A stretch of DNA of 64,000 bases from the sequence record NC_055733.1. One strand, 5' to 3'. A program made the position numbers and the translations under genes. Below are positions 22,278 to 40,582 of this stretch, in pieces. Within the stretch, counting starts at the first letter, position 1. Every line of letters begins with the position of its first letter. Under the pieces are notes generated by a model. It had not been told where the DNA came from, made no database searches, and saw nothing but the letters and a program-made list of their open reading frames with translations.

Positions 22278-22562
22278 TTATTCCCCTTTCATATCAGTTT
22301 CGTATTTCTCGATCATCTGCATATTGATCCACTCGGGCTTGGTTTCGAAGCTGTTATACAGAGCTTTCATGCTTTCGATTTGTTCGCCAACACTGCCAGC
22401 CCACAGGCGAGATTCAGAACGATTTCCGTATCCCAGAAAGAACTCACAATCGGATTTCATACGACTCAGTAGCATGTATTTGAATTCGTGGTCCGCTGGA
22501 CGAGTTGCGATAACTTCTTGAATATAGGTCATGATTTGTTCCTCTCGTTTGGATATGTCCAT
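22278..22562 (-). CDS. LPD11-like (large polyvalent protein domain 11) small protein
   Basis: FKYMLLSRMKSDCEFFLGYGNR...LWAG.V.EQI..MK.LYNSF..KPEW pattern. Confidence 0.65.
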   Translation of the reverse strand: MDISKREEQIMTYIQEVIATRPADHEFKYMLLSRMKSDCEFFLGYGNRSESRLWAGSVGEQIESMKALYNSFETKPEWINMQMIEKYETDMKGE

Positions 22563-22971
22563 AATAGCAGGTTAGATTGGCATGTCAAGCACCAAAACGA
22601 AAAGGCACCCGAAGGTGCCTTAATTTATCTTAACTGATCACTCATTATCCCAAGAACGTTTTACGTTACGTCCGTCGCGACGAGGACGAGACTTGTCTTT
22701 GGCTGGTTTTTCGATGTGCTCACGCTCTTCCATGATAGACTTGATCAAATCGTAATACTCGGCCAGATTATGAGCGCGTTCGCGATCTGCATCGGAACAA
22801 TCCTGTTGATCTGCATGATATTGTGCAGCAGCGCGAGACTTCAACACAGTTTTACGCAGTGCATTCAGACGTTCGGTAGTCAGATTGCGGAGTTTTTTCT
22901 CAGTTAGAAATTCCATCTTTGTTTCCTACAGGTGGTTTTAATACACTATCACTATCACTAATGGCAGATAT

Positions 22972-23093
22972 TGGCGGAGAAGGTGGGATTCGAACCCACG
23001 ACCAACAGTTTGATTTTGCAAGGGTTTGCGGTAAAGAATCTTAATCAGATTCCGCTTTTTGCGACTACTGCTCTACCACTGAGCTACTTCCCC
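22972..23093 (-). ncRNA. tRNA-like RNA E1 (122 nt) with a greatly expanded anticodon arm
   Basis: Acceptor GGGGAAG/CTTCTCC with G3-U70 and encoded CCA; canonical D arm GCTC-AGTGGTA-GAGC and T arm GTGGG-TTCGAAT-CCCAC; ~54 nt in place of the anticodon loop. Confidence 0.8.
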
Positions 23094-23101
23094 AAATTTT
23101 T

Positions 23102-23240
23102 AACAACACTATGCTGGCGGTCTGGGCCTCGAACCCAGATTACAGGCTTAACAGGCGAGTATTTATTGCGGAAAACATTCTTATCAGAATGAATTTTACA
23201 GTGTCCTACCAATTAGACGAACCGCCAGCATAATGTTGTT
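23102..23240 (-). ncRNA. tRNA-like RNA E2 with an insertion between the D arm and an Asn-like CTGTTAA loop
   Basis: Acceptor TGGCGGT/ACCGCCA extended by ~13 bp; D arm GTCT-AATTGGT-AGGAC; T arm CTGGG-TTCGAGG-CCCAG. Confidence 0.75.
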
Positions 23241-23241
23241 T

Positions 23242-23365
23242 GTTGTAGCGATACTGGATTCGAACCAGTGACGTTTCTCGATGTGCCCACACTTAACGGA
23301 ATCGAACCGTTCTCGATACTTCTCTGCGATCAGAGGCGTTCTCCCGCTGAACTAATCGCGACAAC
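23242..23365 (-). ncRNA. tRNA-like RNA E3 with two T-psi-C arms
   Basis: D arm GTTC-AGCGGGA-GAAC; T arms AACGG-TTCGATT-CCGTT and ACTGG-TTCGAAT-CCAGT; terminal stem closes the molecule. Confidence 0.75.
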
Positions 23366-23381
23366 AAAACAATCTTAACAC

Positions 23382-23801
23382 TTATTTCTTAGAGGGTAAA
23401 CCTTTTTCGTTGAAATTTTTCACTGCCAGTTTGAACTTCAAACGAATCAACGTTTCCCGATTCGGATTTACTTTCATGATCTTGGCGTTACCGCGATGAA
23501 TCAGCGCGTAAACATCCTCGATCTGATTGCGAGCGATAAGCTCCGCGAACTCCTCACTATATCGAATCTGAGTAGTGAAGTCGATAAACTCCTCACCTGA
23601 AATCAGATCAACAGAACGAGTTACGGCACCATCATACATGTATTCCGTGTTTACAACAACTCGAACATTATCAGCACCGTCGAACGAGATCATTGGAATA
23701 CCAAGAGGACGTTTGTATGAAAGTGACAACAGACGATCTTTCTCTTTCTGTTCTTCTTGTTCTTTACGCTTTGCTTCCGTGCCACTTGCCTTCTTCGACA
23801 A
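23382..23801 (-). CDS. Hypothetical protein
   Basis: 139-aa co-oriented ORF. Confidence 0.55.
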   Translation of the reverse strand: MSKKASGTEAKRKEQEEQKEKDRLLSLSYKRPLGIPMISFDGADNVRVVVNTEYMYDGAVTRSVDLISGEEFIDFTTQIRYSEEFAELIARNQIEDVYALIHRGNAKIMKVNPNRETLIRLKFKLAVKNFNEKGLPSKK

Positions 23802-23881
23802 TAGCAGTATAGGTATTAGGAAACAGCAGTTTAGCCAGATATTTCATACTCATGATAACTTCCTCTTAGTTAATGTCGCCA

Positions 23882-24226
23882 TTATAATGACTCTGGATTA
23901 CCAGTCAAGAAAAAATACGCGATTGCGATCAAAATTTTACACACAATATGAAGTGCTTGATCTTGATGTAATCCAATCTTGCTGTTGCACTTAGCATAAT
24001 CGATGATCCAATGACTCACAAGCTCTGCCAAACTAAGCCAAACGCTCTTGGTTGCAACGTATACCACAAGCGCATGAGTAGCACTATGAGCAGTTAGCCA
24101 GTAGAACCAATGCACCCCATAGAGCGGAGAATTGATTGGATTCTTACCACGAGCAATACTATCGGATTGCAGAACATAATCGGCCACAAAATGGCCGATT
24201 ATGAGAATATACAGAATTTCAAACAT
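23882..24226 (-). CDS. DUF3307-like membrane protein
   Basis: GHFVADYVLQ...H..TH...SHWIID..K...DQALH pattern with TM helices. Confidence 0.75.
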   Translation of the reverse strand: MFEILYILIIGHFVADYVLQSDSIARGKNPINSPLYGVHWFYWLTAHSATHALVVYVATKSVWLSLAELVSHWIIDYAKCNSKIGLHQDQALHIVCKILIAIAYFFLTGNPESL

Positions 24227-25451: not shown

Positions 25452-26888
25452 TTAGAAATCGATACCGACGTAACGGTCGCTCATGATCTTGTCGAGCATG
25501 ATTTGCATCGGGTTAAACTCTTTCGCACTCAGGATTGTCTCCATGATTGCAGGACTAAAACCAGAAACAAGAGCAGTGCCTTGATCATCTTTGGTCACCG
25601 GATTGTTAGTCGGGCGCGGGCAAAGATTCCAGAACACCAGTTTCGGCATTTCGTAACCAGCGTCGCGGTAAGTCTGACGAATCACCTCAAAGTTGGTAGG
25701 CTCACGGTCACGCATACGATAGTAACCACTATAGCCACCATCAGCAACGTTGAATTCCATGTCAGACAAGACAACCAACATAGTCGGCATATCTTCTTGC
25801 GGAACTCGATTGCGTACAGCGCGATCAAGAATGATCTTGAATGCACCAGCAAAGTTGGTAGAGCCACCCCACGGAGCGCGTCTCAGATGATTCACCATGC
25901 TTTGAAGATCGTCGCCTTTCTCTTTGATGTTGTAGAACTCAGGATTATCATCGAAGGTAATCACTTCGTTCCGGAACACACCGCGCGAACGTTCGCCGAT
26001 GTACAGACCCAGAGAAATCGCGATGTCCATAGCAGACAAGCCAGCAACAGCGGTCGGAGTGCTCATAGAGCCGGAAACGTCAACCATTGCGATTACGTTT
26101 TCAGTAGAGCCAGCCATCCAGTCGCGTTGTGCTTTCCACTGTGCATCAGCAGCAACGGAAGAACCAGTACGCAGGGATTTGATCATGTCATACGGATAAA
26201 CCGCAGCAGCGTTGATCTTAGCCTCACCCTTTTTCAAGGACTCAAGGTAAGCAACATAATGCTCATTCGCGTTTTTCAGGAATGCTTTCTGATAACGAGC
26301 AGAAGCAACAGACGGCAGTTTATCGAACTCAATACCGTCCCACTGACGAGCACACATCTTTTGTTCAACGGTGTTCGACATACGGACGATAGTGTGACGA
26401 TATTCTTTAGCAGTCATTCGCATAGCTTTGGCCAGAATACCGGCTTCTTTGCCCTTTCGAGGTGCCCACTTTGCAGCAAGACCGTTTTGCTTGGTCATGA
26501 TTGCATCAACCATGATAGCCACAGCAGCGTCCTGAATCGGAGAATTGAACATTGCTACCACGTCTTTGAAGCGACCGATTTCAGGAGTGTTCATCAGAAC
26601 TACGGTGGCGTCAACAGGGTGACGATGCGCAAGGACTTTCAGCAGGCGGATGAATTGTTCACGTTCACCGGCACCACCGCGAATATCGCGAGCCCATTGC
26701 AGAATGCGAACAGCCCAGTCAGGAGACTCGGTATAAGCATCAACAAACATCTGAGTCAGATCTTTCCCGCGAGAGGAACCAATCTGAGAAAACAGATTCA
26801 GACACTTGTCGCCAGTGGTGTAGTTAGTGACAGCACCGTTAGCAGTGCGGGTTTGAGCTTGTACCATTGCATTCATAAAATTAGACAC
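25452..26888 (-). CDS. DUF2828-family TROVE/Ro60-like protein with C-terminal vWA (MIDAS) domain
   Basis: ARDIRGGAGER, LAAKWAPR, IEFDKLPSVA, MIDAS DVSGSM, WGGSTNF, SDMEF and FWNL motifs. Start GTG 26888 after GAGG. Confidence 0.8.
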   Translation of the reverse strand: MSNFMNAMVQAQTRTANGAVTNYTTGDKCLNLFSQIGSSRGKDLTQMFVDAYTESPDWAVRILQWARDIRGGAGEREQFIRLLKVLAHRHPVDATVVLMNTPEIGRFKDVVAMFNSPIQDAAVAIMVDAIMTKQNGLAAKWAPRKGKEAGILAKAMRMTAKEYRHTIVRMSNTVEQKMCARQWDGIEFDKLPSVASARYQKAFLKNANEHYVAYLESLKKGEAKINAAAVYPYDMIKSLRTGSSVAADAQWKAQRDWMAGSTENVIAMVDVSGSMSTPTAVAGLSAMDIAISLGLYIGERSRGVFRNEVITFDDNPEFYNIKEKGDDLQSMVNHLRRAPWGGSTNFAGAFKIILDRAVRNRVPQEDMPTMLVVLSDMEFNVADGGYSGYYRMRDREPTNFEVIRQTYRDAGYEMPKLVFWNLCPRPTNNPVTKDDQGTALVSGFSPAIMETILSAKEFNPMQIMLDKIMSDRYVGIDF

Positions 26889-26901
26889 AGAATTACCTCT
26901 T

Positions 26902-27501
26902 TCAGGTTTGTTTGAATTTGTCCCAATCATAGGACAGTTTGTTTTTCCAGCACTTGCGGCAGAACGAAATGTAACGTTGTTCAGCCCCAATGCAAATTTG
27001 TTCACCTCGACGGATAACATTGCCGTTATCATCAACGCGAGCTACCATACAGGATTTTCTACCACAATCACAGATACCAGACAGTTGTCTAATTTCATCT
27101 GAAATCGAAAGTAATGCCCTAGAGCCAGGGAACAAGTTACCGAGAAAATCGGTACGCAGTCCGTAGCACATAACAGGGATATCCAGCTTGTCAACAACGT
27201 CGGACAGTTCCCACACTTGTTTTTCAGTCAGGAACTGTGCTTCATCAACAAGAACACAGGCGATATCGGACAGTTTACTCTCTTTTTCGATCATTGTAAA
27301 CATGTTTTCGTCAACATGCACACAGCGACACTCGCGCTGGATACCGATACGTGATCCAATCGTACCTTCTGTTCTAGTGTCAAACGCAGGTTTGTACAGC
27401 AGAACGTTTTGATTTCTCTCGTTGTAGTTGAAAGCCACTTGCAGTAATTGAGTGCTCTTGCCCACGTTCATCGAGGCATGTGTAAAAAACAGCTTTGCCA
27501 T
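26902..27501 (-). CDS. tk: Thymidine kinase
   Basis: ASMNVGKST, DEAQFL, YGLRTDF.GNLFPGS, CDCG and Y...CRKC motifs. Confidence 0.95.
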   Translation of the reverse strand: MAKLFFTHASMNVGKSTQLLQVAFNYNERNQNVLLYKPAFDTRTEGTIGSRIGIQRECRCVHVDENMFTMIEKESKLSDIACVLVDEAQFLTEKQVWELSDVVDKLDIPVMCYGLRTDFLGNLFPGSRALLSISDEIRQLSGICDCGRKSCMVARVDDNGNVIRRGEQICIGAEQRYISFCRKCWKNKLSYDWDKFKQT

Positions 27502-30269: not shown

Positions 30270-30352
30270 GGCGTCGGAAGGCAGGACTCGAACCCGCACC
30301 CCACTGGGTTTCTGCCCAGTAGCTCTTCCAATTGAGACTTACAACCGACACC
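30270..30352 (-). ncRNA. Aberrant tRNA-like RNA (8-nt anticodon-position loop GCAGAAAC)
   Basis: T arm GCGGG-TTCGAGT-CCTGC; D-like CTC-AATTGGAA-GAG; stem ACTGG/CCAGT; mismatched acceptor; CTAAATA motif just upstream. Confidence 0.6.
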
Positions 30353-31154: not shown

Positions 31155-31229
31155 TGGTGGCCCCGAGCGGACTCGAACCGCTTTTCTTCGCTTATGAGGC
31201 GAGCACATTTACCATTATGTTACGGGGCC
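31155..31229 (-). tRNA. trnI2: tRNA-CAT, probably Ile2 (lysidine type)
   Basis: Acceptor GGCCCCG/CGGGGCC-A-CCA resembles enterobacterial tRNA-Ile2; loop CTCATAA. Confidence 0.8.
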
Positions 31230-31271
31230 GTTTGTTTATAGGAACCATTATTACACAGTTCCTAATGATAG

Positions 31272-31658
31272 TCAACCTTTAAGATTCAATTTGTATCTAA
31301 TCGAAGTCAAAAACGTCATGATATCTTCCAGTGCATTCACCAGATCGAAATGTCGTTTAGTCTCCAAATACTCATGCACCATAGTACACTCTTGCAGGAA
31401 ATTGTCAATCAACATTTCAACTTCAACTTCCGCATGAGTAGCAGTAAAGCTCTGAGCATATCCACGAGCGATAGCGTATTCTGCAAAGCTATCAATCAGC
31501 TCTGGAAGTTCTTCGTAATACGCTTGGAGCGCTTTGTGACGGCTATAGATAGTAGTAGTCAGGTGTTGGTGATGAACGTATGCCACGCTTTTCAGAAGCT
31601 TGGAAATTAGTTCGCCAACACTTGAGTTTGTATCACCTTTGAAATCTTTGAAACTCAT
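31272..31658 (-). CDS. Ferritin/Dps-like four-helix protein (DUF5856-like)
   Basis: H.QH..T..YSRHKALQAYYEELPELIDSFAE pattern. Confidence 0.7.
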   Translation of the reverse strand: MSFKDFKGDTNSSVGELISKLLKSVAYVHHQHLTTTIYSRHKALQAYYEELPELIDSFAEYAIARGYAQSFTATHAEVEVEMLIDNFLQECTMVHEYLETKRHFDLVNALEDIMTFLTSIRYKLNLKG

Positions 31659-31704
31659 ATTATACTCCTAATGAAAAAGGGAGCCGAAGCTCCCTTTATT
31701 TATC

Positions 31705-31782
31705 TGGTGCGCCAACTCGGACTCGAACCGAGAAACAACTGATTCTAAATCAGCTAGGTAGACCAATTCCCATCATTGACGC
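31705..31782 (-). tRNA. trnL: tRNA-Leu(TAG), short variable region
   Basis: Loop TTTAGAA, A73, encoded CCA; only 5 nt between the anticodon and T stems. Confidence 0.8.
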
Positions 31783-31788
31783 ATTGTT

Positions 31789-31876
31789 TGGAGGAGAAAG
31801 TGGGATTCGAACCCACGGACCCTTGCGGGCCTACGAATTAGCAATCCGATACGTTCGGCCTCTCTGTCATTTCTCC
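31789..31876 (-). tRNA. trnS: tRNA-Ser(GCT)
   Basis: Loop TTGCTAA, long variable arm, CCA. Confidence 0.92.
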
Positions 31877-32232
31877 GTATTCTTTGATGTATTCGGCAAC
31901 TCGTTTAATCTGTTCCCATTGAGAATCAGTAACACGCTGACCGGATAACACGAACGAGGCTCTTACATTTTCCTCGATCTCTTTCTTTAAGCTTTGCAAT
32001 AGTGAGTGCCTCTTCGAACAAAACCACCAAAATCTTTCTGACCAATGCAGTGAACACCGCGAGTAACTTTAATCAGTCCAAGCTTTAGCAGCTTTTCGAT
32101 TTGTTGATTGGTACATCTGGCATCACCTTGAGTAGTAGCGAAACCGTATGAATCAGCTTTATCAGCGAAACGGGATGCCAGCTCAAGATCTTGTTTTGTT
32201 GCTTTCATGATATAACTCTCTATTGTTTGATT

Positions 32233-32327
32233 TGGCGGAAGCGATCCGATTCGAACGGATGGACGAGGGGATACCTCGCCGTCAGTTTTCAAGACTGGTG
32301 CAATAAGCCGGACTCTGCCACGCTTCC
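32233..32327 (-). tRNA. trnS: tRNA-Ser(TGA)
   Basis: Loop CTTGAAA, long variable arm, G73, CCA. Confidence 0.93.
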
Positions 32328-32467
32328 AAATTCTTCGACACGGCTTTATGTCGTCATGACTCTTGAACATTACGTTCTGGCTACATACGCGCATCACCTT
32401 CCCGTTTGATAATTTAACGAGTTACGGGAATCATAGCAGCTCATTTTTAGCCTTTGCAAGCTAAATT

Positions 32468-32543
32468 TGGCGGGGGTAACTGGGCTCGAACCAGTGCATG
32501 ACGGAATCAAAGTCCGTTGCCTTACCAACTTGGCTATACCCCT
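32468..32543 (-). tRNA. trnQ: tRNA-Gln(TTG)
   Basis: ACGGA-CTTTGAT-TCCGT; CCA. Confidence 0.93.
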
Positions 32544-32555
32544 ATAAACTGGGAC

Positions 32556-32638
32556 GAATATGAACGTTTAACGTGGATCATCGTCTTATCTTTCGGACAA
32601 CGTATTTCTACGGCCTACTAAGGTAACTCCACATATTC
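32556..32638 (-). ncRNA. Candidate multi-junction small RNA
   Basis: GAATATG/CATATTC and TGGA/TCCA close a junction holding GNRA-type hairpins (CGTA-GAAA-TACG). Confidence 0.5.
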
Positions 32639-32831
32639 AAACGATGCAACGCTTGAATCAATTCAAAGAACTCTATATTAGAATACTTTGAAATGATCCA
32701 CAAGTGAATCACTCGCCCCTTAAATCGCATCACCGATCAAATCGGGAGAGGGAATTTTCAGCTGGACTTCTAACAAAGTTTCCTAGGACATCGTTAGCAT
32801 TCTCTTTAACAGGCCTTTGCAGGCAACTCTG

Positions 32832-32905
<74 letters not shown>

Positions 32906-32920
32906 AATATTCTTATAAAA

Positions 32921-33034
32921 TGGGGCGCTAAGGTAGAGAATCGAACTCTACATGAAATCAATACCGACGGGGCAATCTATATCCCGACTTTCGAGAAGCT
33001 ATCTCATTGCACTTAAAAGCATTAGCGATTTCAC
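32921..33034 (-). ncRNA. tRNA-like RNA with T arm and CCA but a non-tRNA core
   Basis: GTAGAG-TTCGATT-CTCTAC, CGCTAA/TTAGCG terminal pairing, 3' CCA, and two internal hairpins. Confidence 0.65.
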
Positions 33035-33052
33035 CTTTCAAAGCGATTAAAC

Positions 33053-33128
33053 TGGTGCGCCGAACTGGAATCGAACCAGTGACCAACGGAATTTCAACCC
33101 GTCACTCTACCTGCTGAGTTATCGACGC
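33053..33128 (-). tRNA. trnF: tRNA-Phe(GAA)
   Basis: ACGGG-TTGAAAT-TCCGT; CCA. Confidence 0.93.
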
Positions 33129-33136
33129 AAAATTTG

Positions 33137-33211
33137 TGGGTGACGGACGGGCTTCGAACCCGTGACTACCAGGATCACAACCTGGAGTTCTACCAACTGA
33201 ACTACCGCCAC
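33137..33211 (-). tRNA. trnH: tRNA-His(GTG)
   Basis: CCAGG-TTGTGAT-CCTGG, C73; the base at -1 is T, not G. Confidence 0.9.
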
Positions 33212-33292
33212 ATAAATGATCACTCGAAAGAAAGCATTTATGTAACGAGTTACACACCAGATGCTACAAACGGGGCATCTGGATCCCTCTTA

Positions 33293-33377
33293 TGGTGCTC
33301 GGCACAAGATTCGAACTTGCGATGCCTTTCGGTCTGGATTACAAAACCAGTGCATTCAACCACTCTGCCAACCGAGC
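33293..33377 (-). tRNA. trnY: tRNA-Tyr(GTA) copy 1
   Basis: Loop TTGTAA in stem CTGG/CCAG, long variable arm, CCA. Confidence 0.9.
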
Positions 33378-33386
33378 GTTTTAAAT

Positions 33387-33478
33387 TGGTGGATGCGGTA
33401 GGATTCGAACCTACAACGTTTACCCTGTGGGGCCAGATTTACAGTCTGGTGCAATACCACCGTCATTGCAGCACATCC
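33387..33478 (-). tRNA. trnY: tRNA-Tyr(GTA) copy 2
   Basis: CCAGA-CTGTAAA-TCTGG, long variable arm, CCA. Confidence 0.92.
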
Positions 33479-33503
33479 ATTATTCGTTATTTAGTACGCT
33501 AAG

Positions 33504-33577
33504 AAGCGAGTACCTGATTCGAACAGGTGATCTCTGGGATATGAGCCCAGCGAGGACGGCCTCTCCTCCAACTCGCA
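33504..33577 (-). tRNA. trnfM: Initiator tRNA-fMet(CAT)
   Basis: Three consecutive G-C pairs (CTGGG/CCCAG) and an unpaired 1:72 position; no CCA. Confidence 0.85.
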
Positions 33578-33597
33578 TCTTAGCGCACTAATCAATT

Positions 33598-33673
33598 TGG
33601 TTCTCCGTATGGAATTCGAATCCATGTTACCGCCGTGAAAGGGCAGTGTCCTAGTCCACTAGACGAACGGAGA
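33598..33673 (-). tRNA. trnE: tRNA-Glu(TTC)
   Basis: CTGCC-CTTTCAC-GGCGG; CCA. Confidence 0.92.
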
Positions 33674-33677
33674 TCTG

Positions 33678-33917
33678 TCAGTAAGCGAAACTAAACAATC
33701 GTCTTTGTTTTGCTTTTAAGTCTTCTTCGACAACAGGAACATTATCACATGTTTCCGCAGTAGAGTAAACATCTTTTTGTTTTTCTTTTTCAGCGGCTTC
33801 CGCAGCTTTCTTTCTAGCAAGTGGACCAACGTTTTTCCACAAAGGCGCGTTGTACCATGCTGCACTACATTGATTCGCTGAGCCACGATTGGCACGAGCG
33901 TCTAAATCATTACTCAT
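33678..33917 (-). CDS. Small late-promoter ORF
   Basis: GGAG RBS and ACTAAATA motif at ~33944-33951. Confidence 0.55.
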   Translation of the reverse strand: MSNDLDARANRGSANQCSAAWYNAPLWKNVGPLARKKAAEAAEKEKQKDVYSTAETCDNVPVVEEDLKAKQRRLFSFAY

Positions 33918-33960
33918 TTACTAACTCCGTCTAAATTACAACAGTATTTAGTAACCAAAT

Positions 33961-34086
33961 TTAAATGCACTGTCGCGATCCCCGTAGGTGGTTCCCACCT
34001 ACTAGCCTTTGTTCGCACAAGCTTGCGGCTCTTAGCTACATACGAGGGCTTATCTCGTCCCATTTAGGTTAGGGCAATGCACTTAA
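33961..34086 (-). ncRNA. Candidate ~125-nt multibranch RNA
   Basis: Terminal TTAAGTGCATTG/CAGTGCATTTAA stem; internal ACGAG/CTCGT, TAGC/GCTA and GTAGGTGG-GAA-CCACCTAC stems. Confidence 0.6.
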
Positions 34087-34089
34087 ATT

Positions 34090-34163
34090 TGGTGGAGACG
34101 GCGGGATTTCCACCCGTATCTCAGATCCCAGTGACCTGCGATTATGAAGTTATCTACGTCCCC
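34090..34163 (-). ncRNA. 74-nt tmRNA-TLD-like / Ala-identity mini-RNA
   Basis: GGGGACG/CGTCTCC with G3-U70, A73 and CCA; no D stem; CAGGTC/GATCTG stem; degenerate T loop TGGAAAT. Confidence 0.65.
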
Positions 34164-34210
34164 GAGAAGGCTTAAACGTAACGAGTCAGAGGTTTAAGCG
34201 CGATTGAATT

Positions 34211-34285
34211 TGGTGGTGCATAGTAGATTTGAACTACTGACCGACGGCGTATGAAACCGCAGCTCTACCACTGAGCTAATGCACC
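34211..34285 (-). tRNA. trnM: tRNA-Met(CAT), elongator type
   Basis: Loop TTCATAC, canonical arms, CCA. Confidence 0.85.
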
Positions 34286-34477
34286 AGACGGTATCAAGAG
34301 TCGATACCGAGGCAATAATATTGATTTAACTCATACTACCGCTATATAGGCCGCAGTATAAGAAGCGCGTTGGTGTCAATAGTAACGTTTAAGTTATTCG
34401 CCCCACACAACAATCACCGCTTTTTATAGCCTATCGCCACGCAATAAGCAATCTACCTATTGATTGACTCGACTATT

Positions 34478-34554
34478 TGGTGAGTCGCCCGAGATTCGAA
34501 CTCGGGACCTTCTGATTAAAAGTCAGATATTCTATCCAACTGAATTAGCGACTC
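34478..34554 (-). tRNA. trnK: tRNA-Lys(TTT)
   Basis: TCTGA-CTTTTAA-TCAGA; CCA. Confidence 0.95.
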
Positions 34555-34560
34555 ATTGTT

Positions 34561-34635
34561 TGGCAGGGCGCGGGAGACTCGAACTCACATCGCGCGGTTT
34601 TGGAGACCGGCATAATACCGTTATACTAACGCCCT
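34561..34635 (-). tRNA. trnW: tRNA-Trp(CCA)
   Basis: CGGT-CTCCAAA-ACCG, G73, CCA. Confidence 0.92.
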
Positions 34636-34814
34636 AGAATTCTTACCAGCTATCAAAATCTGTAATAGGAACGCTCTTTGCGCCTTCTTTGACAGCTTTC
34701 GCACTTACTACAGTACCGATTGAACCGCTTTGATATTCAATGTTTCGTGCATCTGCATGAGTTCCATCATACGCTGTAATTCGGTAACTGAAAATCTTAC
34801 AATCATTTTTGCAC

Positions 34815-35414
34815 CTACACAATAGGACTTTCGATTATGACGTCAAGAACGGAATAATACGTGCTGTATTCCGAACTCATATCATCGTAATATGCGCGAA
34901 CTTTGCTTTCGGCATCGTCTACGTCTTCCGCTTCTACCAACTTAATGGTATCGAATGACTTAGAGGAACCCATGTATTCGCTTTTCATATAACGTATCTT
35001 AGCAAGAAACATCATCGTTGTAAACTACCTTTTAGCCGCTAGTTTGAAATATTCGCTGTTCGGTACCGACATCGGTTGAACACCAGTTAACTCAAGAGCT
35101 ATTAAACTCGGCATAGCTTTGAGGATAAGAGGCATCTGTATCTTATCAGGCAACGGACGCTTTTCAAGTTTGATTTTTCGAATCTCTTGCCACTGATTCC
35201 GTTCTTCGCAGGCTTTCAGTAGCTCAAGTTCTAAGTCATTGCTATAGTTAACACCATACGCGATTACGCTATCAAATTCAACTGGATTTTGATCAACATA
35301 CTCGATGATCTGCCGTAAAGTTTCGACGTCATCTTGAAACCAACCGCAGTTGATAAAACAATTTCCGACACAATCGCCGTTCTTCATGAACAGCGCATAA
35401 CTAGGTGCGCTCAT
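34815..35414 (-). CDS. Two small hypothetical ORFs inside the tRNA cluster
   Basis: 34815..35015 and 35025..35414, with RBSs. Confidence 0.55.
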
Positions 35415-35429
35415 ATTTTATTTCTCATT

Positions 35430-35504
35430 TGGAGTACCGAGTCTGGTTCGAACAGACGATAAAGTGATTTGCAATCACTTGCCTTACCTCTTGGCTATCG
35501 GCAC
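35430..35504 (-). tRNA. trnC: tRNA-Cys(GCA)
   Basis: AGTGA-TTGCAAA-TCACT, U73, CCA. Confidence 0.93.
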
Positions 35505-35511
35505 GTTAATC

Positions 35512-35584
35512 TGGAGCGAGTGAGGAGAATCGAACTCCCTATCTACGGCTTGGAAGGCCGAGCGCGTACCTTACGCACACTCGC
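35512..35584 (-). tRNA. trnG: tRNA-Gly(TCC)
   Basis: CGGC-CTTCCAA-GCCG, U73, CCA. Confidence 0.9.
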
Positions 35585-36203
35585 TTTTACAACTTTTTAT
35601 GTGTTTGATCATTCCACCAGTTTTCTTACCGGTTCTACCGCATTTTGGACACGATATAATTGGTCTATTATCTGGTGCGTTTTTGACCGACTCTGAAATT
35701 TTTCTTCTAGTTTCTTCACTTTTTGGCAAACTGGCAATTTTAGCAAGTTTCTCGAAGTGAAGTTTAGCATTTTCTGGATCTTTACGAACCCAGCTATTAC
35801 TTCGTATTTTATTTTTGGATTCTTCCGAATGTCGGAATTTACTAGCCATTTCACTTAATATTTTCTTGGTTTCTTCTGTGTGATGTTTACCGTGAAATTT
35901 CGAAACAGCTCCAGAGTTTATCCAATCCCACCCGCCTTCTCCACCAATCTTCAAATTGTATGTATCATCGCGGCCTACAAAATCACTGTCAACAATTTCA
36001 CGTTCTTTGAGATACATTTCTTCCTTTGTCTGGAATTCGTAAAGTATCTCCTTTTTGAAGTTATCAATCCCGTATTTGGAAATAGATAGTTTCAAATGTT
36101 TACCGGAGCCCATATACCCATCATTTTCATCTGATGTCTTATGTGCGCCTATGTAGAATTTGCCGTTTATTTTGTTGGTGATTTTATAAATTAAGTATTT
36201 CAT
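35571..36203 (-). mobile_element. Freestanding GIY-YIG (Seg-type) homing endonuclease
   Basis: LIYKITNKINGKFYIG.H...DGYMGSG...KYG..NF.KEIL; NUMOD3-like HTEETKKILSE repeats. Confidence 0.9.
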
Positions 36204-36260
36204 CGGAACTCCAAAAAAGGAATACCGAGCGCCTCACGGCGTGTCATTAAATCAAAAATT

Positions 36261-36334
36261 TGGTGGAGCACGGGGACTCGAACCCCGGATCTCTGCGTGC
36301 AAAGCAGAAGTGTTCCCAATTATACCATGACCCC
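36261..36334 (-). tRNA. trnA: tRNA-Ala(TGC)
   Basis: TCTGC-TTTGCAC-GCAGA, G3-U70, CCA; the 3' acceptor strand is one base short. Confidence 0.85.
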
Positions 36335-36344
36335 AAATTCTAAT

Positions 36345-36550
36345 AGATACTCGAAAGTATACATTAGAATAGGCACTTTATGCAAGTACCTACGCAAGTC
36401 TTCGGATTCACATACGGGAGTGGTGACTAACCCACGTTACTTTTACCTGCTGTTCCCTCTCAGCCGCACATCCAACTACCGAAGCAAAGGAGTGCTATCT
36501 TTTAATAGTAGATTTGAAGTTTTGTATTGGTTGCAGAAGTGAATCCATAC
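36345..36550 (-). ncRNA. Candidate ~150-200-nt structured RNA
   Basis: Long-range GGATTCAC/GTGAATCC helix enclosing several hairpins; no ORF on the sense strand. Confidence 0.55.
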
Positions 36551-36609
36551 ATTTTCAAAGAGCATTGAACTACTGTCGGGTAAGTTCATTTTTCCTACTA
36601 GGTAGAAAC

Positions 36610-36686
36610 TGGCAGTGACGACGGGGCTCGAACCCGCGCTCTCCGACGTGACAGGCCGGAATTTTAACCAACTAAACTACGTCACT
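36610..36686 (-). tRNA. trnD: tRNA-Asp(GTC)
   Basis: CCGGC-CTGTCAC-GTCGG, G73, CCA. Confidence 0.93.
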
Positions 36687-36692
36687 AGAAAC

Positions 36693-36767
36693 TGGTAGCC
36701 ATGGGCAGGCTTGAACTGCCGACCCCACCCTTATCAGGGGTGTGCTCTACCACTGAGCTACATGGCT
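36693..36767 (-). tRNA. trnI: tRNA-Ile(GAT)
   Basis: CACCC-CTGATAA-GGGTG; CCA. Confidence 0.95.
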
Positions 36768-36804
36768 ATAAACTGGAAGACTTTTAACTGCCACCTGGAC
36801 TCTT

Positions 36805-36887
36805 GTGCTAGAGAGTTGAGGAATCGAACCTCACCGTTTTCTTAACAATAGAAAATTCGAATGGTTTGCTGAAATCTTCCGTAGCAC
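36805..36887 (-). ncRNA. Degenerate tRNA-like RNA (T arm, no D arm, GTT-containing hairpin)
   Basis: GTGCTA/TAGCAC ends, TGAGG-TTCGATT-CCTCA, TTTTCT-ATTGTTA-AGAAAA. Confidence 0.55.
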
Positions 36888-36903
36888 GGTAAATTGTTAT
36901 TTG

Positions 36904-36977
36904 CGGAGGAGACCGGACTCGAACCGGTGACCTGTCGCTTAACAGGCGAATGCTCTAACCAACTGAGCTACACCTCC
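36904..36977 (-). tRNA. trnN: tRNA-Asn(GTT)
   Basis: TCGC-CTGTTAA-GCGA, G73; no CCA. Confidence 0.92.
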
Positions 36978-37074
36978 CAAATAACAACTCTAATCAATAA
37001 GAAACGGAATGAACTTTTAGGCTATTTCAATATAATGGCTTTTTAAGTTGGTTGCTGAACTCATTCCTATCTTT

Positions 37075-37290
37075 GTTTACTATACACTACTATTTAGTGA
37101 CTGTAAACAAAGCTTCTTAAATTTTTGACAGGCTCACTTTTGTTTTTCATCCGCAGAAAAGTTTTGATTGCTGAACGGAGCCTTATAAAGATTGTATCAC
37201 GTTTTATCAACGCTGTAAACTATCTTTTATTTATGCTCTACTTTAAGAGCATGTGATAATGATAGCACAGTGTTTTAATAGAGTAAACAA
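37075..37290 (-). promoter_or_regulatory. Three tandem T4-early-type promoters driving the tRNA cluster
   Basis: GTTTAC(A/T)-N17 followed by TATAGT (~37080), TACAAT (~37192) and TATCAT (~37259); the first also contains ACTAAATA. Confidence 0.8.
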
Positions 37291-37324
37291 TCTTTTTCTC
37301 GATATCCCACACATTGTTTCATGC

Positions 37325-37525
37325 TACTGCCGGTTGAGTCCGAAGACCGAATAAGGGTTCACTTCCACGTTAGGTTTACGGCATACCGAGAAAAAGACAG
37401 TCCGCATCACAGTGTTAGCGCAAGGGGTTCCACTGTCACTAAGTTATTTAGTGTCTACTGTCAACCAGCTAGGTGGGCGCTGGTCCCGTCCATACGAGCA
37501 TGATGCCACCAATACATGCTCGGAA
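37325..37525 (-). ncRNA. Candidate ~200-nt structured RNA with possible kissing loops
   Basis: CGAGCATG/CATGCTCG, ACCAGC/GCTGGT, GACAGT/ACTGTC and GGTC-TTCG-GACT stems; loop complementarity GGTGG/CCACC. Confidence 0.6.
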
Positions 37526-37556
37526 AGATCTTACGGTTTTTCAAATCTCGAAATCT

Positions 37557-39781
37557 TTACTTGTCGTAATAATATGGCTTGCATTGACCTTCGAACTTGG
37601 TTTGACCACCGAACAATCCAACGCGATTCTCGCCATATGTATCTTGTGCATTTTCCTCCGCGACTTTCAGCGCGGCTCTGCATTCTGCTTCGGTGTCGAA
37701 CTTCTCAATTGTATGGCTATGTGAGCCATAATTGGTACCAAAGTTAACGAACAACGAAGTAATCAACAAGAACTTAATCATAACATCACCTATTGGCATT
37801 GTAAACTTATTTAGTATCGCAGGAATACACTTCTTTCACGCGAGTTACAGAACGTTTGGTAACGTTAATGGAGCTACCCTGATACCAGCGAGACTCAGAG
37901 TCCAGCACTTTGTCAACAACTGCCTCAGACTTAGGCAGAATCACATCAAAGCAGGTTTGTCCCATTTTGTCTTTCATGTGCGACCAGATAGACAGCGAGA
38001 AACGTTCGAGTTTGTTACAGACTTTTACCTTGCACATTTCTTCGGACTGAGCGCCGAAAGATAACAGCGCGAGCAGAATTACGGCAGCTTTCATTCTTCA
38101 ATCTCCACAACTCGATTTGTTTTTACAAGATGATCCCACAGCTTTTGATAAGAGATTGAATAATCTTCTTTATCGTTGCAGCAAGAACAGCCTTGTTCAT
38201 AGTAAACGGTGATCCAGTTCATGTCAAGCTTATAGCCACATCCGTAGAAATGACGACTACCGTGACTGGGTTTACCCAGCTCATAGTTTACGACCTCTTC
38301 CAGTGCGGTATCAATACCGTCAGAATCGATGAAGTCTTCCGCCGCGTCTTGCTTACGCAAAGCGTCCATAAAGTCAAACAGATTATCAATGTTCATGATT
38401 ATTTCTCACAATTAACACACATATAAAAAGGCATTGATGCTGCAACGGCACCACTAATGGTAAGACCATACGGGAGAAAATTGCCACATTTGCATTTTGA
38501 TTGCTTTCGATAGTTGACTTTCTCAACAGAACGAATCATAACACGGCACAACGATTGAAGCAAGAACTTATTCATTTTATTTTCCTCATTAGCCATAGTA
38601 ATACGTTATCGCATTAATATGGCGGCTCTTTCGAGCCACCTTTTAGAAATCGGGCCATTCGTCTCTCACGATTAGACCCCCCCCTTGAACTCCACGATAT
38701 TTGAAATCTCGTTGAACTCACCGTACTTCTGCATTGACGGAACAATGTTGCCATTCTCGTCATGAATCAGATCTGGATTTTCTTTCCAGCTACCGACTGG
38801 ATACATGTATTCTGACACAGCATCCGAATTCAAGTCAACAACTAATTTCGGACTGATTTTTAGTGGGTATTCGCGAGTCTGATCATTCTCAGCACCAGCT
38901 ACCACAATTCGAGTCATCAGATCGGCATGATACAGATGATCGTTGTCCTGACTGCCGTATTGTTGTGGGTTAAACTCGATGATGAGTTCACACAACATGC
39001 TAACAAACTTACGGAGTCCGATATGCAGATCTGCATTAGCAGCGGTGAGTTTAATAACAAGGTTTGTCAAGTTGTTTTTAGAGTAAGGACCCATTCCTAC
39101 ATTGACAACGCTATCATATTCCCAGGAGAAACCCATACTGAGATATTCATTGAACAGATCCTTTCTCAGTTCATCACGAATGATCTCTGGCTCCTTCTCG
39201 ATTTCTTCCAGTCTAAAAGTGAGTTCTTCTTTAGTCAAGCGTTTTTTATCTGGATCACGAATTGCAAGCCTGGCGAAAGTATCGCGGATCTCTTTATGCG
39301 ACTTGATAGCGTAGTCTTTGTTCCATGATTGTTCCAATTTGCGGTCATATTCTGCTACCATCAGATCATAGACTTTCCGCTTGATTACCATGAACATAAC
39401 TGGAGATTTCTTTGCACCGCTGAATGAGAAAGCTGGCTGAATATACAAAGCTTCTTCGTGCATCAAGTCCTGATATGACAGCTTTTTCGGATCGAATAGA
39501 TCATCAATGTTAACATTACGTTCTTCGTCACAAACGATATAAGTCTTTACCATGTCTTGGAACGCTTGGTATGCGTCGTTATCTTCGATCTCGAAGTTAC
39601 CATAGTCATCATATGTCGCATACATCGGAAGATGCATAGCGAGCTGGTATCGATCCCAGTTATAGCAACCAGGTGCGGCTGGAATAGTTTCTCCGTTACA
39701 AACGAGTGCCAGCAGAACAACCGGTTCGCCACATGTAACGATATGACGACTAACGCCACAAATAGTATTGAAAGAACCCAC
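37557..39781 (-). CDS. Hypothetical ORFs (two exported small proteins, 38091..38396, 38399..38596, 369-aa 38672..39781)
   Basis: Signal peptides in 37557.. and 37807..; co-oriented. Confidence 0.55.
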
Positions 39782-39836
39782 GTAATTTTCCCTTGATTAG
39801 GTTACAAAAAAGCCCCAGTTAAGGGGCTTATGATAA

Positions 39837-40226
39837 TTAAGCGATAGCTTCCAGAACAGCTTCCAGAGATTCTTCGATCATGACGCGATTCGGTACGTCA
39901 TACTCGGAAGTGCGGAAACTCAGAAGAACTTCACCGTGAATGTTCTCATGCAGACCAACGATCTTGTCGGCACCAACTACGAACTTCGCAATGCCACGAT
40001 GTTCAACCGGAGTAACAACAGCGCGTTTGATGTAGCAATCTTTCAGTTTCAGCGCCAGATCTTCGAAACGCTCGGCAACAGTATACACAGTCGGCAGTTG
40101 ACCGTCAACTTTTACAGTCAGCAGAGTCTTACCAGAATGCAGCTTTACCAGACCAACAACTTTCTCGGAGTTGACTACGAAACGGGTGATTTTACCAGCT
40201 ACAGGGGATACAACAAAACGGGACAT
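39837..40226 (-). CDS. Protein of two tandem FlbD-like repeats
   Basis: Internal duplication: FVVNSEKVVGL...TVAERFEDL / FVVGADKIVGL...IEESLEAV. Confidence 0.55.
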   Translation of the reverse strand: MSRFVVSPVAGKITRFVVNSEKVVGLVKLHSGKTLLTVKVDGQLPTVYTVAERFEDLALKLKDCYIKRAVVTPVEHRGIAKFVVGADKIVGLHENIHGEVLLSFRTSEYDVPNRVMIEESLEAVLEAIA

Positions 40227-40492
40227 TTTAGTTCCTTAAACAGTGATAGAAAATACATGCTGGTCATTCTCAATGATTCCAGCGTTGTTGTCAACGAAAA
40301 TTTCAAAATTCATTTCCTTTGACGCTTCGATGTGAGCTTTCGCAGCTTCTAATGCCACTACACTCGGGTATTCCGAACGATTTCCAGCGAAAATACAGAT
40401 GCCGTTTAGACCATAAACACGTCCACTAAAGCTTCCGTCTTCATCTTGGTCCAGTATACAGACAAGTTTCAACGTGTCAACCTCTTTTCGTT

Positions 40493-40577: not shown

Positions 40578-40582
40578 GAATT

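What the first reader, a model, noticed from the sequence alone, without database searches (positions are those of the whole stretch)
22972..23093. E1: Ala-identity tRNA mimic (G3-U70, CCA) with two mutually pairing anticodon-like triplets
Seen: acceptor GGGGAAG/CTTCTCC has the G3-U70 alanine determinant, G73 and an encoded CCA. The ~54-nt anticodon replacement contains GCAA near its 5' side and CTTGCAA (an Ala-type loop) near its 3' side; GCAA can pair with TTGC around a GCGG/CCGC helix. Inference: it could be alanylated without being able to decode, so it might act as an EF-Tu/AlaRS sink or an aminoacyl donor.
Basis: partly seen in the sequence, partly recalled or inferred. Interest (0 to 1): 0.65.

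Follow-up and report, generated by a model that had tools for sequence, protein, structure and literature searches.

The report
Phage Y RNA in tRNA form
This 122-base gene of Aeromonas phage Ah1 is most likely a "Y RNA", not an alanine-tRNA decoy: a tRNA-shaped scaffold whose anticodon loop is replaced by the conserved module found in RNAs next to phage Ro60-like genes, in an ordinary tRNA layout with a CCA end that the papers I read do not describe for Y RNAs.

Summary
The window is Aeromonas phage Ah1, a T4-like phage. E1 (23093..22972, minus strand) is a real tRNA-shaped RNA (Rfam tRNA 54.3 bits). A 54-nt insert replaces its anticodon loop.

- G3-U70 occurs only in Ah1 and avDM12; the other orthologs have G3-C70.
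- The discriminator base varies (G, U or A).
- The GCAA/TTGC and GCGG/CCGC pairings fail in most orthologs.

What is conserved is a module inside the insert: an A-rich strand, a hairpin with an invariant CU/AG top and a covarying stem, then a UUYAC-N-GCA motif.

- The same module sits in RNAs next to Ro60-like genes in unrelated phages: 21 hits in 17 of 80 such loci against 1 in 117 control loci.
- Most of those RNAs have the circularly permuted YrlA layout (closed acceptor hairpin).
- Ah1 encodes such a protein 2.4 kb upstream on the same strand. Its AlphaFold model matches Ro60 over its full length.

Best reading (0.7): E1 and its neighbour E2 are Y-RNA-like tRNA mimics in native tRNA topology that partner the phage Ro60. 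Binding, expression and charging are untested. Earlier notes of this scan, on this same genome, had already suggested the Ro link.

The parts
22972..23093 (-). E1: 122-nt tRNA-shaped RNA with a Y-RNA-type module in place of the anticodon loop
   Evidence: Rfam tRNA 54.3 bits. Own model R1 scores 119.4 bits. Conserved in 13 Aeromonas phage records.
23087..23093 (-). E1 acceptor stem, 5' strand (GGGGAAG). It pairs with 22976..22982.
   Evidence: All 7 pairs show compensatory changes and are 100% paired in 12 family members. The G3-U70 wobble is seen only in Ah1 and avDM12.
23070..23084 (-). E1 D arm with canonical A14, G18 and G19
   Evidence: Rfam alignment. The stem changes in a compensatory way in phiAS5.
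23054..23063 (-). Module, A-rich 5' strand (CGCAAAAAGC)
   Evidence: The A run is conserved in E1 orthologs and LAh_9. It corresponds to the A-rich stretch before the 3' stem strand of the permuted forms.
23035..23053 (-). Module hairpin. Stem 23047..23052 pairs with 23036..23041; loop 23042..23046. The top is an invariant CU...AG.
   Evidence: 100% paired. Three pairs are invariant (A-U, C-G, U-A) and three covary. The loop sequence equals the junction between the 3' and 5' ends of the permuted forms.
23026..23035 (-). Module motif UUUACCGCAA (family consensus UUYAC-N-GCA), directly 3' of the hairpin
   Evidence: Invariant T60, T61, A62, C63, G65, C66, A67 and A68 in E1 orthologs plus LAh_9. 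Shared with FelixO1, Listeria P100 and metagenomic RNAs near Ro60-like genes. Enriched against controls and decoy motifs.
23010..23025 (-).
   Evidence: Least conserved part, 31-62% identity to orthologs.
23005..23009 (-). E1 anticodon-stem 3' strand (ACTGT). It pairs with 23064..23068 (GTAGT).
   Evidence: G-U to A-U changes keep the pairing in orthologs. The stem is weak in distant members, 60% paired.
22983..22999 (-). E1 T arm with TTCGAAT loop
   Evidence: 100% paired, with 4 of 5 pairs showing compensatory changes.
22972..22975 (-). Discriminator G73 and encoded CCA
   Evidence: CCA is encoded in 9 of the 12 aligned family members, including all E1 orthologs from complete phage genomes. 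N73 varies.
23112..23229 (-). E2: second tRNA-shaped RNA with the same module (hairpin CATTCT/AGAATG, then TTTTCCGCAA). It has a 9-bp acceptor stem and no encoded CCA.
   Evidence: R1 68.5 bits. The insert is almost invariant among six phages. Orthologs lie at L136:8439-8558, L158, L197 and L138:9037-9152.
23244..23362 (-). E3: third tandem tRNA-shaped RNA, divergent, with two T-arm-like hairpins. The module is not clearly recognisable.
   Evidence: Rfam tRNA 25.9 bits. R1 23.5 bits. ARAGORN intron mode.
25452..26930 (-). Ro60-like gene (TROVE-type ring plus vWA domain; Pfam DUF2828, DUF7788 and VWA_2)
   Evidence: Pfam and PHROG 850 'RNA-binding protein'. AlphaFold2 model pLDDT 86.5; Foldseek hits Ro60 structures 1yvr, 1yvp and 2i91 and phage phiLo Ro60 9l5y at E about 3e-9, TM about 0.6, full length.
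23881..23908 (-). Sigma-70-like promoter (TTGACT, 16 nt, TATAAT) upstream of ORF 23801..23382 and the three RNAs
   Evidence: 11 of 12 consensus match. A consensus match only.
22602..22621 (-). Terminator-like hairpin after the rI.1-like ORF (22916..22638) that follows E1
   Evidence: 8-bp stem followed by a T run.

Best explanation
E1, and its neighbour E2, is a phage Y-RNA-like tRNA mimic. The acceptor, D and T arms form a normal tRNA L-shape with an encoded CCA end. The anticodon loop is replaced by a module made of three parts: an A-rich strand, a hairpin with a conserved CU/AG top, and a UUYAC-N-GCA motif.

I infer that this module docks the phage's own Ro60-like ring protein, encoded 2.4 kb upstream on the same strand.

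Inferred life cycle: the three RNAs are transcribed early with their neighbours. Host RNase P and 3' processing enzymes cut them out like tRNAs. Each then forms a ribonucleoprotein with Ro60. In that particle the tRNA-like half recruits or gates a host factor, such as an exoribonuclease like PNPase or some tRNA-handling enzyme. This would reshape RNA decay or repair, or counter a host defence.

Shown here:
- the tRNA fold;
- conservation and covariation of the module;
- its enrichment next to Ro60-like genes;
- its homology with circularly permuted (YrlA-layout) RNAs;
- the Ro60 fold of the protein.

Inferred only: expression, processing, Ro60 binding and the effector.
For: (1) tRNA body. Rfam tRNA 54.3 bits. 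Acceptor, T arm and module hairpin are 100% paired with compensatory changes in 12 members; 0 of 500 shuffles reach the observed covariation score.

(2) The insert, not the body, is what selection keeps. Ah1 against the unrelated Aeromonas phage LAh_9: module 74% identical, tRNA stems 43%.

(3) The neighbouring protein is a Ro60 homolog. It belongs to a family found in 708 phage records.

(4) Co-location.
- A pattern of stem, motif and T arm gives 21 hits in 17 of 80 Ro60-like loci, 20 of them on the gene's strand and 11 of those 20 within 0.9 kb.
- The same pattern gives 1 hit in 117 control loci of equal total length (Fisher p = 9e-7 by locus, 5e-4 per T-arm-like site).
- 66 decoy motifs average 0.7 hits, maximum 4.

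(5) Fifteen hits have the YrlA layout: module 3' half, T arm, closed acceptor hairpin, D arm, module 5' half. Examples are L141, L159, L209 and FelixO1 L130:7448-7578. E1's hairpin loop reads as the joined 3' and 5' ends of those RNAs.

(6) Listeria phage P100 has three tandem RNAs carrying the same stem and ACAGCAA motif, without a tRNA part, just upstream of its Ro60-like gene. In the P100-like phage CKA15, highly transcribed unannotated regions lie within 2 kb of that gene (PMC12282133).

(7) Literature.
- YrlA RNAs lie within 4 kb of Ro60 on the same strand and mimic tRNA (PMC4201824).
- Phage phiLo Ro60 binds two neighbouring Y-like RNAs and host PNPase (PMC12135203).
- The FelixO1-like phage Bas63 Ro60-like gp130 counters the Ppl defence system (PMC11482910).
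Against: - There is no expression or binding data for Ah1. The only RNA-type runs holding any of the region are wastewater contigs that match generic tRNA arms of other organisms.
- The published YrlA motif GNCGAAN0-1G is not literally present in Ah1 E1. The conserved motif here is a different one, though it sits at the equivalent position.
- Only 17 of 80 Ro60-like loci score with my narrow pattern.
- Ro60-like genes tend to sit beside tRNA clusters anyway: 261 R1 hits in 1.19 Mb against 51 in 0.88 Mb. Part of the co-location could therefore be indirect.
- The control loci were not matched phage tRNA clusters.
- Five small ORFs separate the Ro60-like gene from the RNAs in Ah1.
Confidence: 0.7

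Rival explanations
1. E1 is a tRNA-scaffolded stable RNA whose conserved module works independently of Ro60. Examples would be a decoy or inhibitor for a host tRNA-targeting defence nuclease, or a small regulatory RNA that uses the tRNA body only for processing and stability, like the unexplained stable RNAs C and D of the T4 tRNA cluster.
For: T4 encodes tRNA-cluster stable RNAs, one with a T arm, whose function is not given in the record. The tRNA body would provide RNase P processing. The link to Ro60 rests on location alone.
Against: The module tracks Ro60-like genes across unrelated phages of Gram-negative and Gram-positive hosts. It also occurs without any tRNA part in P100. T4 has no such module; its rnaC scores 22.8 bits with R1, below ordinary tRNAs, and rnaD scores nothing.
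Confidence: 0.15
2. E1 is a genuine tRNA gene interrupted by a short intron, as GenBank records imply (Aeh1: tRNA-Val CAC; PX29: tRNA-Leu in two joined pieces). It would be spliced to a decoding tRNA, perhaps filling the missing Val or Arg.
For: The 23 ordinary tRNAs lack Val and Arg. ARAGORN in intron mode and the depositors call it a tRNA with an intron. T4-like phages are known to carry RNA ligases and polynucleotide kinase (general knowledge; not checked in Ah1).
Against: - No splice choice gives a loop with U33.
- Orthologs get five different anticodons.
- The insert is better conserved than the tRNA stems.
- The insert is homologous to RNAs in which the same module forms the termini, where splicing has no meaning.
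- There is no group I intron or ribozyme match.
- 54 nt is far below the size of known bacterial tRNA introns (general knowledge).
Confidence: 0.07
3. One reading: an alanine-accepting, non-decoding tRNA mimic. It would act as an AlaRS/EF-Tu sink or aminoacyl donor, or as a miniature tmRNA-like molecule, since G3-U70, CCA and a large insert recall the tmRNA tRNA-like domain.
For: G3-U70 and CCA are present in Ah1. G3-U70 is the main AlaRS determinant (established knowledge). The insert holds a five-codon frame ending at the UGA of the hairpin (read).
Against: - G3-U70 is absent from Aeh1, PX29, phiAS5, phiWae14 and LAh_9, and the discriminator varies.
- The short frame is not kept in phiAS5, L138 or E2 (read).
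- ARAGORN finds no tmRNA.
- The 'frame' lies inside a conserved, covarying hairpin.
Confidence: 0.06
4. E1 is a decaying tRNA pseudogene with a chance insertion.
For: The Aeh1 genome paper lists three tRNA 'pseudogenes' from tRNAscan-SE (PMC1524935).
Against: All helices are kept by compensatory changes. The insert is conserved across phage genera, and the CCA end is retained.
Confidence: 0.02

Closest known systems
YrlA-type bacterial and phage Y RNAs (Chen et al. 2014, PMC4201824; Wang et al. 2018, bioRxiv 10.1101/312249)
   Same: Both are tRNA-like, with D arm, T arm, acceptor helix and elbow nucleotides. Both are encoded within 4 kb of a Ro60 homolog on the same strand. Both carry a second module with a conserved short motif on the strand that leads into the variable loop and T arm. 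Both often occur in sets of two or three RNAs.
   Different: YrlA is a circularly permuted tRNA: its ends lie in the Ro-binding stem, its acceptor stem is a closed hairpin, and it has no free CCA. E1 and E2 have ordinary tRNA topology: an open 7-bp acceptor stem, CCA encoded in E1, and the module closed by a small loop where the anticodon loop would be. The motif is UUYAC-N-GCA rather than GNCGAAN0-1G.
Permuted module-bearing RNAs beside DUF2828-type Ro60-like genes
   Same: Same stem top (CU/AG), same motif after the stem, same A-rich opposite strand, and the same kind of tRNA-like domain.
   Different: Circular permutation of E1. To my knowledge they are not annotated in the records I looked at.
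Yrl1 and Yrl2 of Thermus phage phiLo with phiRo60 (PMC12135203)
   Same: Phage-encoded RNAs next to a phage Ro60. Binding to Ro60 and to host PNPase was shown in vitro.
   Different: Described as stem-bulge-stem RNAs with a CGAA motif, with no tRNA-like domain reported. The protein is a distant relative; it appears among the fold matches.
Deinococcus radiodurans Yrn1 with Rsr and PNPase (RYPER)
   Same: It serves as the mechanistic model: the Y RNA tethers Ro60 to an exoribonuclease. It has some tRNA-like features.
   Different: The Ro-binding stem takes the place of the acceptor stem. The D arm is doubtful (PMC4201824).
T4 stable RNAs C and D (rnaC, rnaD)
   Same: Small stable RNAs of a T4-type phage, made alongside tRNAs. 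rnaC has a T arm.
   Different: No shared module and no Ro60 gene in T4. The R1 score is below that of ordinary tRNAs.
tmRNA
   Same: A tRNA-like acceptor and T arm with CCA, G3-U70 in Ah1, and a large insert where the anticodon arm would be. tmRNA also exists in permuted two-piece forms (general knowledge).
   Different: No conserved tag frame, no pseudoknots, and no ARAGORN tmRNA call. G3-U70 is not conserved.

Membership tests
Y RNA of the YrlA type | Encoded within about 4 kb of a Ro60 ortholog, on the same strand | tested here: met
   E1 lies 2.36 kb downstream of ORF 26930..25452, same strand. The Ro60 fold is confirmed. The same arrangement is seen in Aeh1, LAh_9, L136, L138, L158 and L197.
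Y RNA of the YrlA type | Domain that mimics the tRNA D arm, T arm, acceptor helix and elbow | tested here: met
   Rfam tRNA 54.3 bits. Covariation in the helices.
Y RNA of the YrlA type | Conserved GNCGAAN0-1G motif on the 5' strand of the Ro-binding module | tested here: not met
   Ah1 E1 has CGCAA-type words, not GNCGAA; only phiAS5 has GUCGAA. A different motif, UUYAC-N-GCA, is conserved at the equivalent position.
Y RNA of the YrlA type | Circularly permuted tRNA layout with closed acceptor hairpin and no free CCA | tested here: not met
   E1 has an open acceptor stem, whose two strands covary with each other, and an encoded CCA. Neighbouring units cannot pair across the spacers (read).
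Y RNA of the YrlA type | Physical association with Ro60 | not testable with these tools
   No RNA-protein complex tool was available, and no informative RNA data exist.
Decoding tRNA with an intron | After intron removal, a 7-nt anticodon loop with U33 and a purine at 37, and the same anticodon in orthologs | tested here: not met
   No splice choice gives U33. ARAGORN in intron mode gives Val, Cys, SeC, Arg and Pro for the orthologs.
Decoding tRNA with an intron | A recognisable splicing device (group I intron or self-cleaving ribozyme) | tested here: not met
   Rfam at E up to 1 finds nothing but tRNA across 22800..23600.
AlaRS substrate (tRNA-Ala identity) | G3-U70 in the acceptor stem, kept among orthologs | tested here: not met
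   Present in Ah1 and avDM12 only. G3-C70 in five other lineages.
AlaRS substrate (tRNA-Ala identity) | Actual alanylation | not testable with these tools
   Needs charging assays.
tmRNA | Tag reading frame with resume and stop codons, conserved, plus pseudoknots | tested here: not met
   No tmRNA call by ARAGORN. The short frame is not conserved (read).
T4 rnaC/rnaD stable RNAs | Sequence or structure similarity to rnaC or rnaD | tested here: not met
   R1 gives 22.8 bits on part of rnaC and nothing on rnaD.

The most novel reading that the evidence does not exclude
E1-type RNAs are functional Ro60-bound Y RNAs that keep a live tRNA acceptor end. Unlike every YrlA described in the papers read here, they could be handled by RNase P, the CCA-adding enzyme, a synthetase or EF-Tu. 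That would let the phage Ro60 particle plug into the tRNA machinery, or into a tRNA-directed host defence. They would also be the unpermuted form from which permuted YrlA RNAs arose by tandem duplication, or the reverse. This would show that Y RNAs of this kind began as tRNAs with a Ro60-docking insert in the anticodon loop.
Probability: 0.2. Interest if true: 0.8.

Novelty: new variant of a known kind. Interest (0 to 1): 0.58.

Why it matters
Bacterial and phage Y RNAs are known tRNA mimics, but the job of the tRNA-like half is unknown. The described ones lack a free CCA end.

- A natural Y-RNA-like molecule in ordinary tRNA topology, sitting beside permuted relatives, offers a direct handle on that question. 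One can ask whether the acceptor end is processed, CCA-tailed or charged, and which tRNA-binding factor is recruited.
- It also bears on how Y RNAs evolved from tRNAs.
- It defines a simple sequence module (stem with CU/AG top plus UUYAC-N-GCA) that seems to mark partner RNAs of a very large phage Ro60-like family: 708 phage records, and at least 7,937 proteins in metagenomes.
- One member of that family has been reported to counter a bacterial defence system.
- It corrects database annotations that call these genes tRNA-Val, tRNA-Leu or tRNA-Ala.

Tried and rejected
- The 14-nt pattern from the 5' end of E1, scanned in viral contigs, was too unspecific: 119 mostly chance loci. I reused them as controls.
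- A strict pattern for the insert found only known relatives.
- Rfam holds no match other than tRNA, and no ribozyme or Y RNA family matched here. It also found nothing in a mycobacteriophage Ro-like locus.
- A sequence search of PDB with the Ro60-like protein was blank. Only the fold search showed the relation.
- A literature search for DUF2828 gave nothing useful.
- RNA evidence: the only RNA-type runs are wastewater contigs. They match the D and T arms with other letters in between, so they are ordinary tRNAs of other organisms. One 'skip 61' joint at depth 2 is of that kind and is not evidence of splicing.
- Pairwise alignment of a permuted E1 to the FelixO1 RNA was collinear but only modestly above shuffles: 34 against 20.3 +/- 3.8, with native order scoring 32. 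The case for permutation rests on the shared motifs and layouts.
- Considered and rejected: intron-bearing tRNA, mini-tmRNA, relative of T4 rnaC/rnaD, pseudogene. Reasons are given under the rival explanations.

Full report
**What the DNA is.** The region is 100% identical to Aeromonas phage Ah1, a T4-like Straboviridae phage, and 84-98% identical to twelve further records of Aeh1-like phages: avDM12, Aeh1, PX29, AsFcp, phiAS5 and phiWae14. The window is bases 62001-126000 of the 221-kb genome.

**Checking the observation.**
- On the minus strand, 23093..22972 reads as a tRNA with a 7-bp acceptor stem, canonical D and T arms, a 5-bp anticodon stem, G73 and an encoded CCA.
- 54 nt stand where the 7-nt anticodon loop should be.
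- Rfam's tRNA model scores it at 54.3 bits and puts the whole insert in the anticodon loop. ARAGORN in default mode skips it.
- Two more elements of the same kind lie directly upstream on the same strand: E2 (23229..23112) and E3 (23362..23244).

I aligned the orthologs (A1; A5) and read off the quoted positions.
- G3-U70 exists only in Ah1 and its near-twin avDM12. Five other lineages have G3-C70.
- The discriminator is G, U or A.
- GCAA/TTGC can pair only in Ah1.
- GCGG/CCGC can pair only in Ah1 and Aeh1, and it overlaps a better-supported hairpin.
- CTTGCAA lies in the least conserved stretch of the insert.
- ARAGORN in intron mode assigns the E1 orthologs Val, Cys, SeC, Arg and Pro. GenBank records call them tRNA-Val (Aeh1) or tRNA-Leu with an intron (PX29).

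There is therefore no stable anticodon or amino-acid identity. No splice choice yields a loop with U33.

**What is conserved instead.** An E1 homolog turned up in the unrelated Aeromonas phage LAh_9 (Lahexavirus), 2.4 kb from that phage's 'RNA-binding protein' gene.
- Between Ah1 and LAh_9 the tRNA stems are 43% identical, but positions 31-68 of the insert are 74% identical.
- The conserved module has three parts: an A-rich strand; a hairpin whose top is always CU...AG, closed by a 3-5 nt loop; and, directly after the hairpin, UUYAC-N-GCA.
- In an alignment of 12 members from six lineages, the acceptor stem, T arm and module hairpin are 100% paired.
- 19 of 27 pairs show compensatory changes, and 0 of 500 shuffles reach the observed covariation score.
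- E2 carries the same module.

**The neighbouring protein.** ORF 26930..25452, on the same strand 2.4 kb upstream, matches Pfam DUF2828, DUF7788 and VWA_2 and PHROG 850 'RNA-binding protein'.
- A sequence search of PDB was blank.
- An AlphaFold2 model from a 36-sequence alignment (pLDDT 86.5) matches Ro60 over its full length. Hits include Xenopus Ro60 1yvr/1yvp/2i91, human Ro60 complexes, the Ro60 of Thermus phage phiLo 9l5y/9kop, and Deinococcus Rsr 2nvo. E is about 3e-9 and TM about 0.6.
- Homologs occur in 708 phage records, including FelixO1-like, KVP40-like, mycobacteriophage 'Ro-like', Listeria P100-like and Campylobacter phages. At least 7,937 metagenomic proteins belong to the family.

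**Co-location test.** I fetched 80 viral contigs encoding relatives of this protein. As controls I used 117 unrelated viral loci of equal total length.
- A covariance model built on the 12 members (R1) found full-length members above the scores of ordinary tRNAs (at most about 72 bits) only in Ro60-like loci. It found none in T4.
- R1 cannot see permuted layouts. I therefore scanned for the module itself: a 6-bp stem with AG/CT top, the motif T[ACT]C-N-GC[AG] within 3 nt, and a T arm within 80 nt. The partner strand of the stem could lie either just upstream (native layout) or downstream of the T arm (permuted layout).
- Result: 21 hits in 17 of 80 Ro60-like loci, 20 of them on the gene's strand, against 1 hit in 117 controls.
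- Fisher p is 9e-7 by locus and 5e-4 per T-arm-like site.
- 66 decoy motifs give a mean of 0.7 hits and a maximum of 4.
- Eleven of the 20 same-strand hits lie within 0.9 kb of the gene.

**Native and permuted forms.** Six hits are native (like E1) and fifteen are permuted.
- The permuted ones read: module 3' half with the motif, variable region, T arm, closed acceptor hairpin, D arm, A-rich strand and module 5' half. This is the published YrlA layout.
- Their 3' ends finish in ...UCUGAU and their 5' ends start UAAAGA... E1's hairpin loop reads UCUGAU-UAAGA, which is the junction of those ends.
- FelixO1 has such an RNA in an unannotated gap of its tRNA cluster, 1 kb downstream of its Ro60-like gene. 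A second, tRNA-less RNA with the same stem and motif lies beside it.
- Contig L138 carries, behind its own promoter, two native members and one permuted member in tandem.
- Listeria phage P100 has three tandem RNAs with the same stem, ACAGCAA motif and A-rich strand, directly upstream of its Ro60-like gene.

**Literature.**
- Chen et al. 2014 (PMC4201824) showed that bacterial and some phage Ro60 genes have tRNA-mimicking YrlA RNAs within 4 kb on the same strand.
- Wang et al. 2018 (bioRxiv 10.1101/312249) solved the YrlA tRNA-like domain. They describe YrlA as a circularly permuted tRNA without a free CCA end and propose an origin from a dimeric tRNA.
- The phiLo study (PMC12135203) showed a phage Ro60 binding two neighbouring Y-like RNAs and host PNPase.
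- A preprint on the FelixO1-like phage Bas63 (PMC11482910) found that its Ro60-like gp130 counters the Ppl defence system, and guessed that some neighbouring 'tRNAs' might be Y RNAs.
- A multi-omics study of the P100-like phage CKA15 (PMC12282133) found three very highly transcribed unannotated regions within 2 kb of its Ro60-like gene.
- I found no description of a Y RNA in native tRNA topology. My search was limited to the held library.

**Mechanism.**
- Shown: the fold, the conserved module, its homology to YrlA-layout RNAs, its enrichment beside Ro60-like genes, and the Ro60 fold of the protein.
- Inferred, transcription: a promoter-like site at 23908..23881 and a terminator-like hairpin at 22621..22602 bracket ORF 23801..23382, then E3, E2, E1 and an rI.1-like ORF.
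- Inferred, processing: tRNA-type excision, with CCA encoded in E1 and probably added to E2.
- Inferred, function: docking of Ro60 on the module, and use of the tRNA-like half to recruit or gate a host factor. This follows the Deinococcus Rsr-Yrn1-PNPase particle and the phiLo data.

**Limits.**
- There are no RNA data for this phage. The runs found are DNA metagenomes, plus wastewater RNA-type contigs that only match generic tRNA arms.
- The published GNCGAA motif is not met.
- My pattern is narrow and the controls are not matched tRNA clusters.
- Ro60-like genes sit near tRNA clusters in general.
- E3 is a divergent member whose module I could not recognise.

**Verdict.** The alanine-decoy reading is not supported as a conserved function. 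E1 is best read as a Y-RNA-like tRNA mimic of a new layout, partner of the phage Ro60 (confidence 0.7). Earlier first-reader notes of this scan, on this same genome, had already suggested a Ro60 link and a shared inserted motif. I reached the Ro60 link before reading them, then tested it further.

Noticed in passing
window 40757..40861 (-): A fourth long tRNA-shaped gene (Rfam tRNA 53.7 bits), with a ~28-nt hairpin insert beside a CUUCU...AA loop. It reads as tRNA-Arg(UCU) with the anticodon paired into the insert; ARAGORN in intron mode calls it Leu(aag). It lacks the Y-RNA module. An earlier scan note covers it.
   Followed up: partly
window 31155..40667 (-): The 23 ordinary tRNAs cover every amino acid except Arg and Val.
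   Followed up: no
window 30270..30348 (-): A tRNA-shaped sequence found only by model R1 (33.4 bits). Its anticodon-like loop is CAGAAAC, with A where U33 should be. Neither ARAGORN nor Rfam at gathering score calls it.
   Followed up: partly
window 34090..34163 (-): A weak R1 match (24.5 bits) at the 74-nt odd tRNA-like RNA that an earlier scan note describes.
   Followed up: no
window 23244..23362 (-): E3 has two T-arm-like hairpins and a direct repeat, AUCGAGAA. In Ah1 its acceptor stem has a C3/U70 mismatch where the other five aligned phages (avDM12, Aeh1, PX29, phiAS5, phiWae14) have C-G. A near-identical abattoir-metagenome contig differs at 23344.
   Followed up: partly
L138:8860-9303 (+): A metagenomic phage contig with a strong sigma-70-like promoter driving three tandem module-bearing RNAs 0.5 kb downstream of its Ro60-like gene. 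Two are in native tRNA layout and one in permuted layout.
   Followed up: partly
L217:3134-3460 (+), Listeria phage P100: A promoter, then three tandem RNAs with the same stem, ACAGCAA motif and A-rich strand but no tRNA part, directly upstream of gp165 (Ro60-like). The record annotates the nearby tRNAs on the opposite strand from where R1 finds them.
   Followed up: partly
L130:7330-7578 (+), Salmonella phage FelixO1: The unannotated 430-nt gap in the tRNA cluster holds two module-bearing RNAs. One has a permuted tRNA-like domain (T arm, closed acceptor hairpin, D arm).
   Followed up: partly
L137-L216 against L006-L106: Phage Ro60-like genes sit in tRNA-rich neighbourhoods: 261 R1/tRNA hits in 1.19 Mb against 51 in 0.88 Mb of control loci.
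   Followed up: no
GenBank records AY266303, GU396103, LC778249: Database annotation of these RNAs is inconsistent. E1 is tRNA-Val(CAC) in Aeh1 and tRNA-Leu in two joined pieces in PX29. E3 is tRNA-OTHER in PX29 and tRNA-Ala in phiWae14. Ah1, avDM12 and phiAS5 annotate nothing there.
   Followed up: yes
window 22278..22562 (-) and 23882..24226 (-): Flanking small ORFs carry an LPD11 domain (large polyvalent protein-associated domain 11) and a DUF3307 membrane-protein domain.
   Followed up: no
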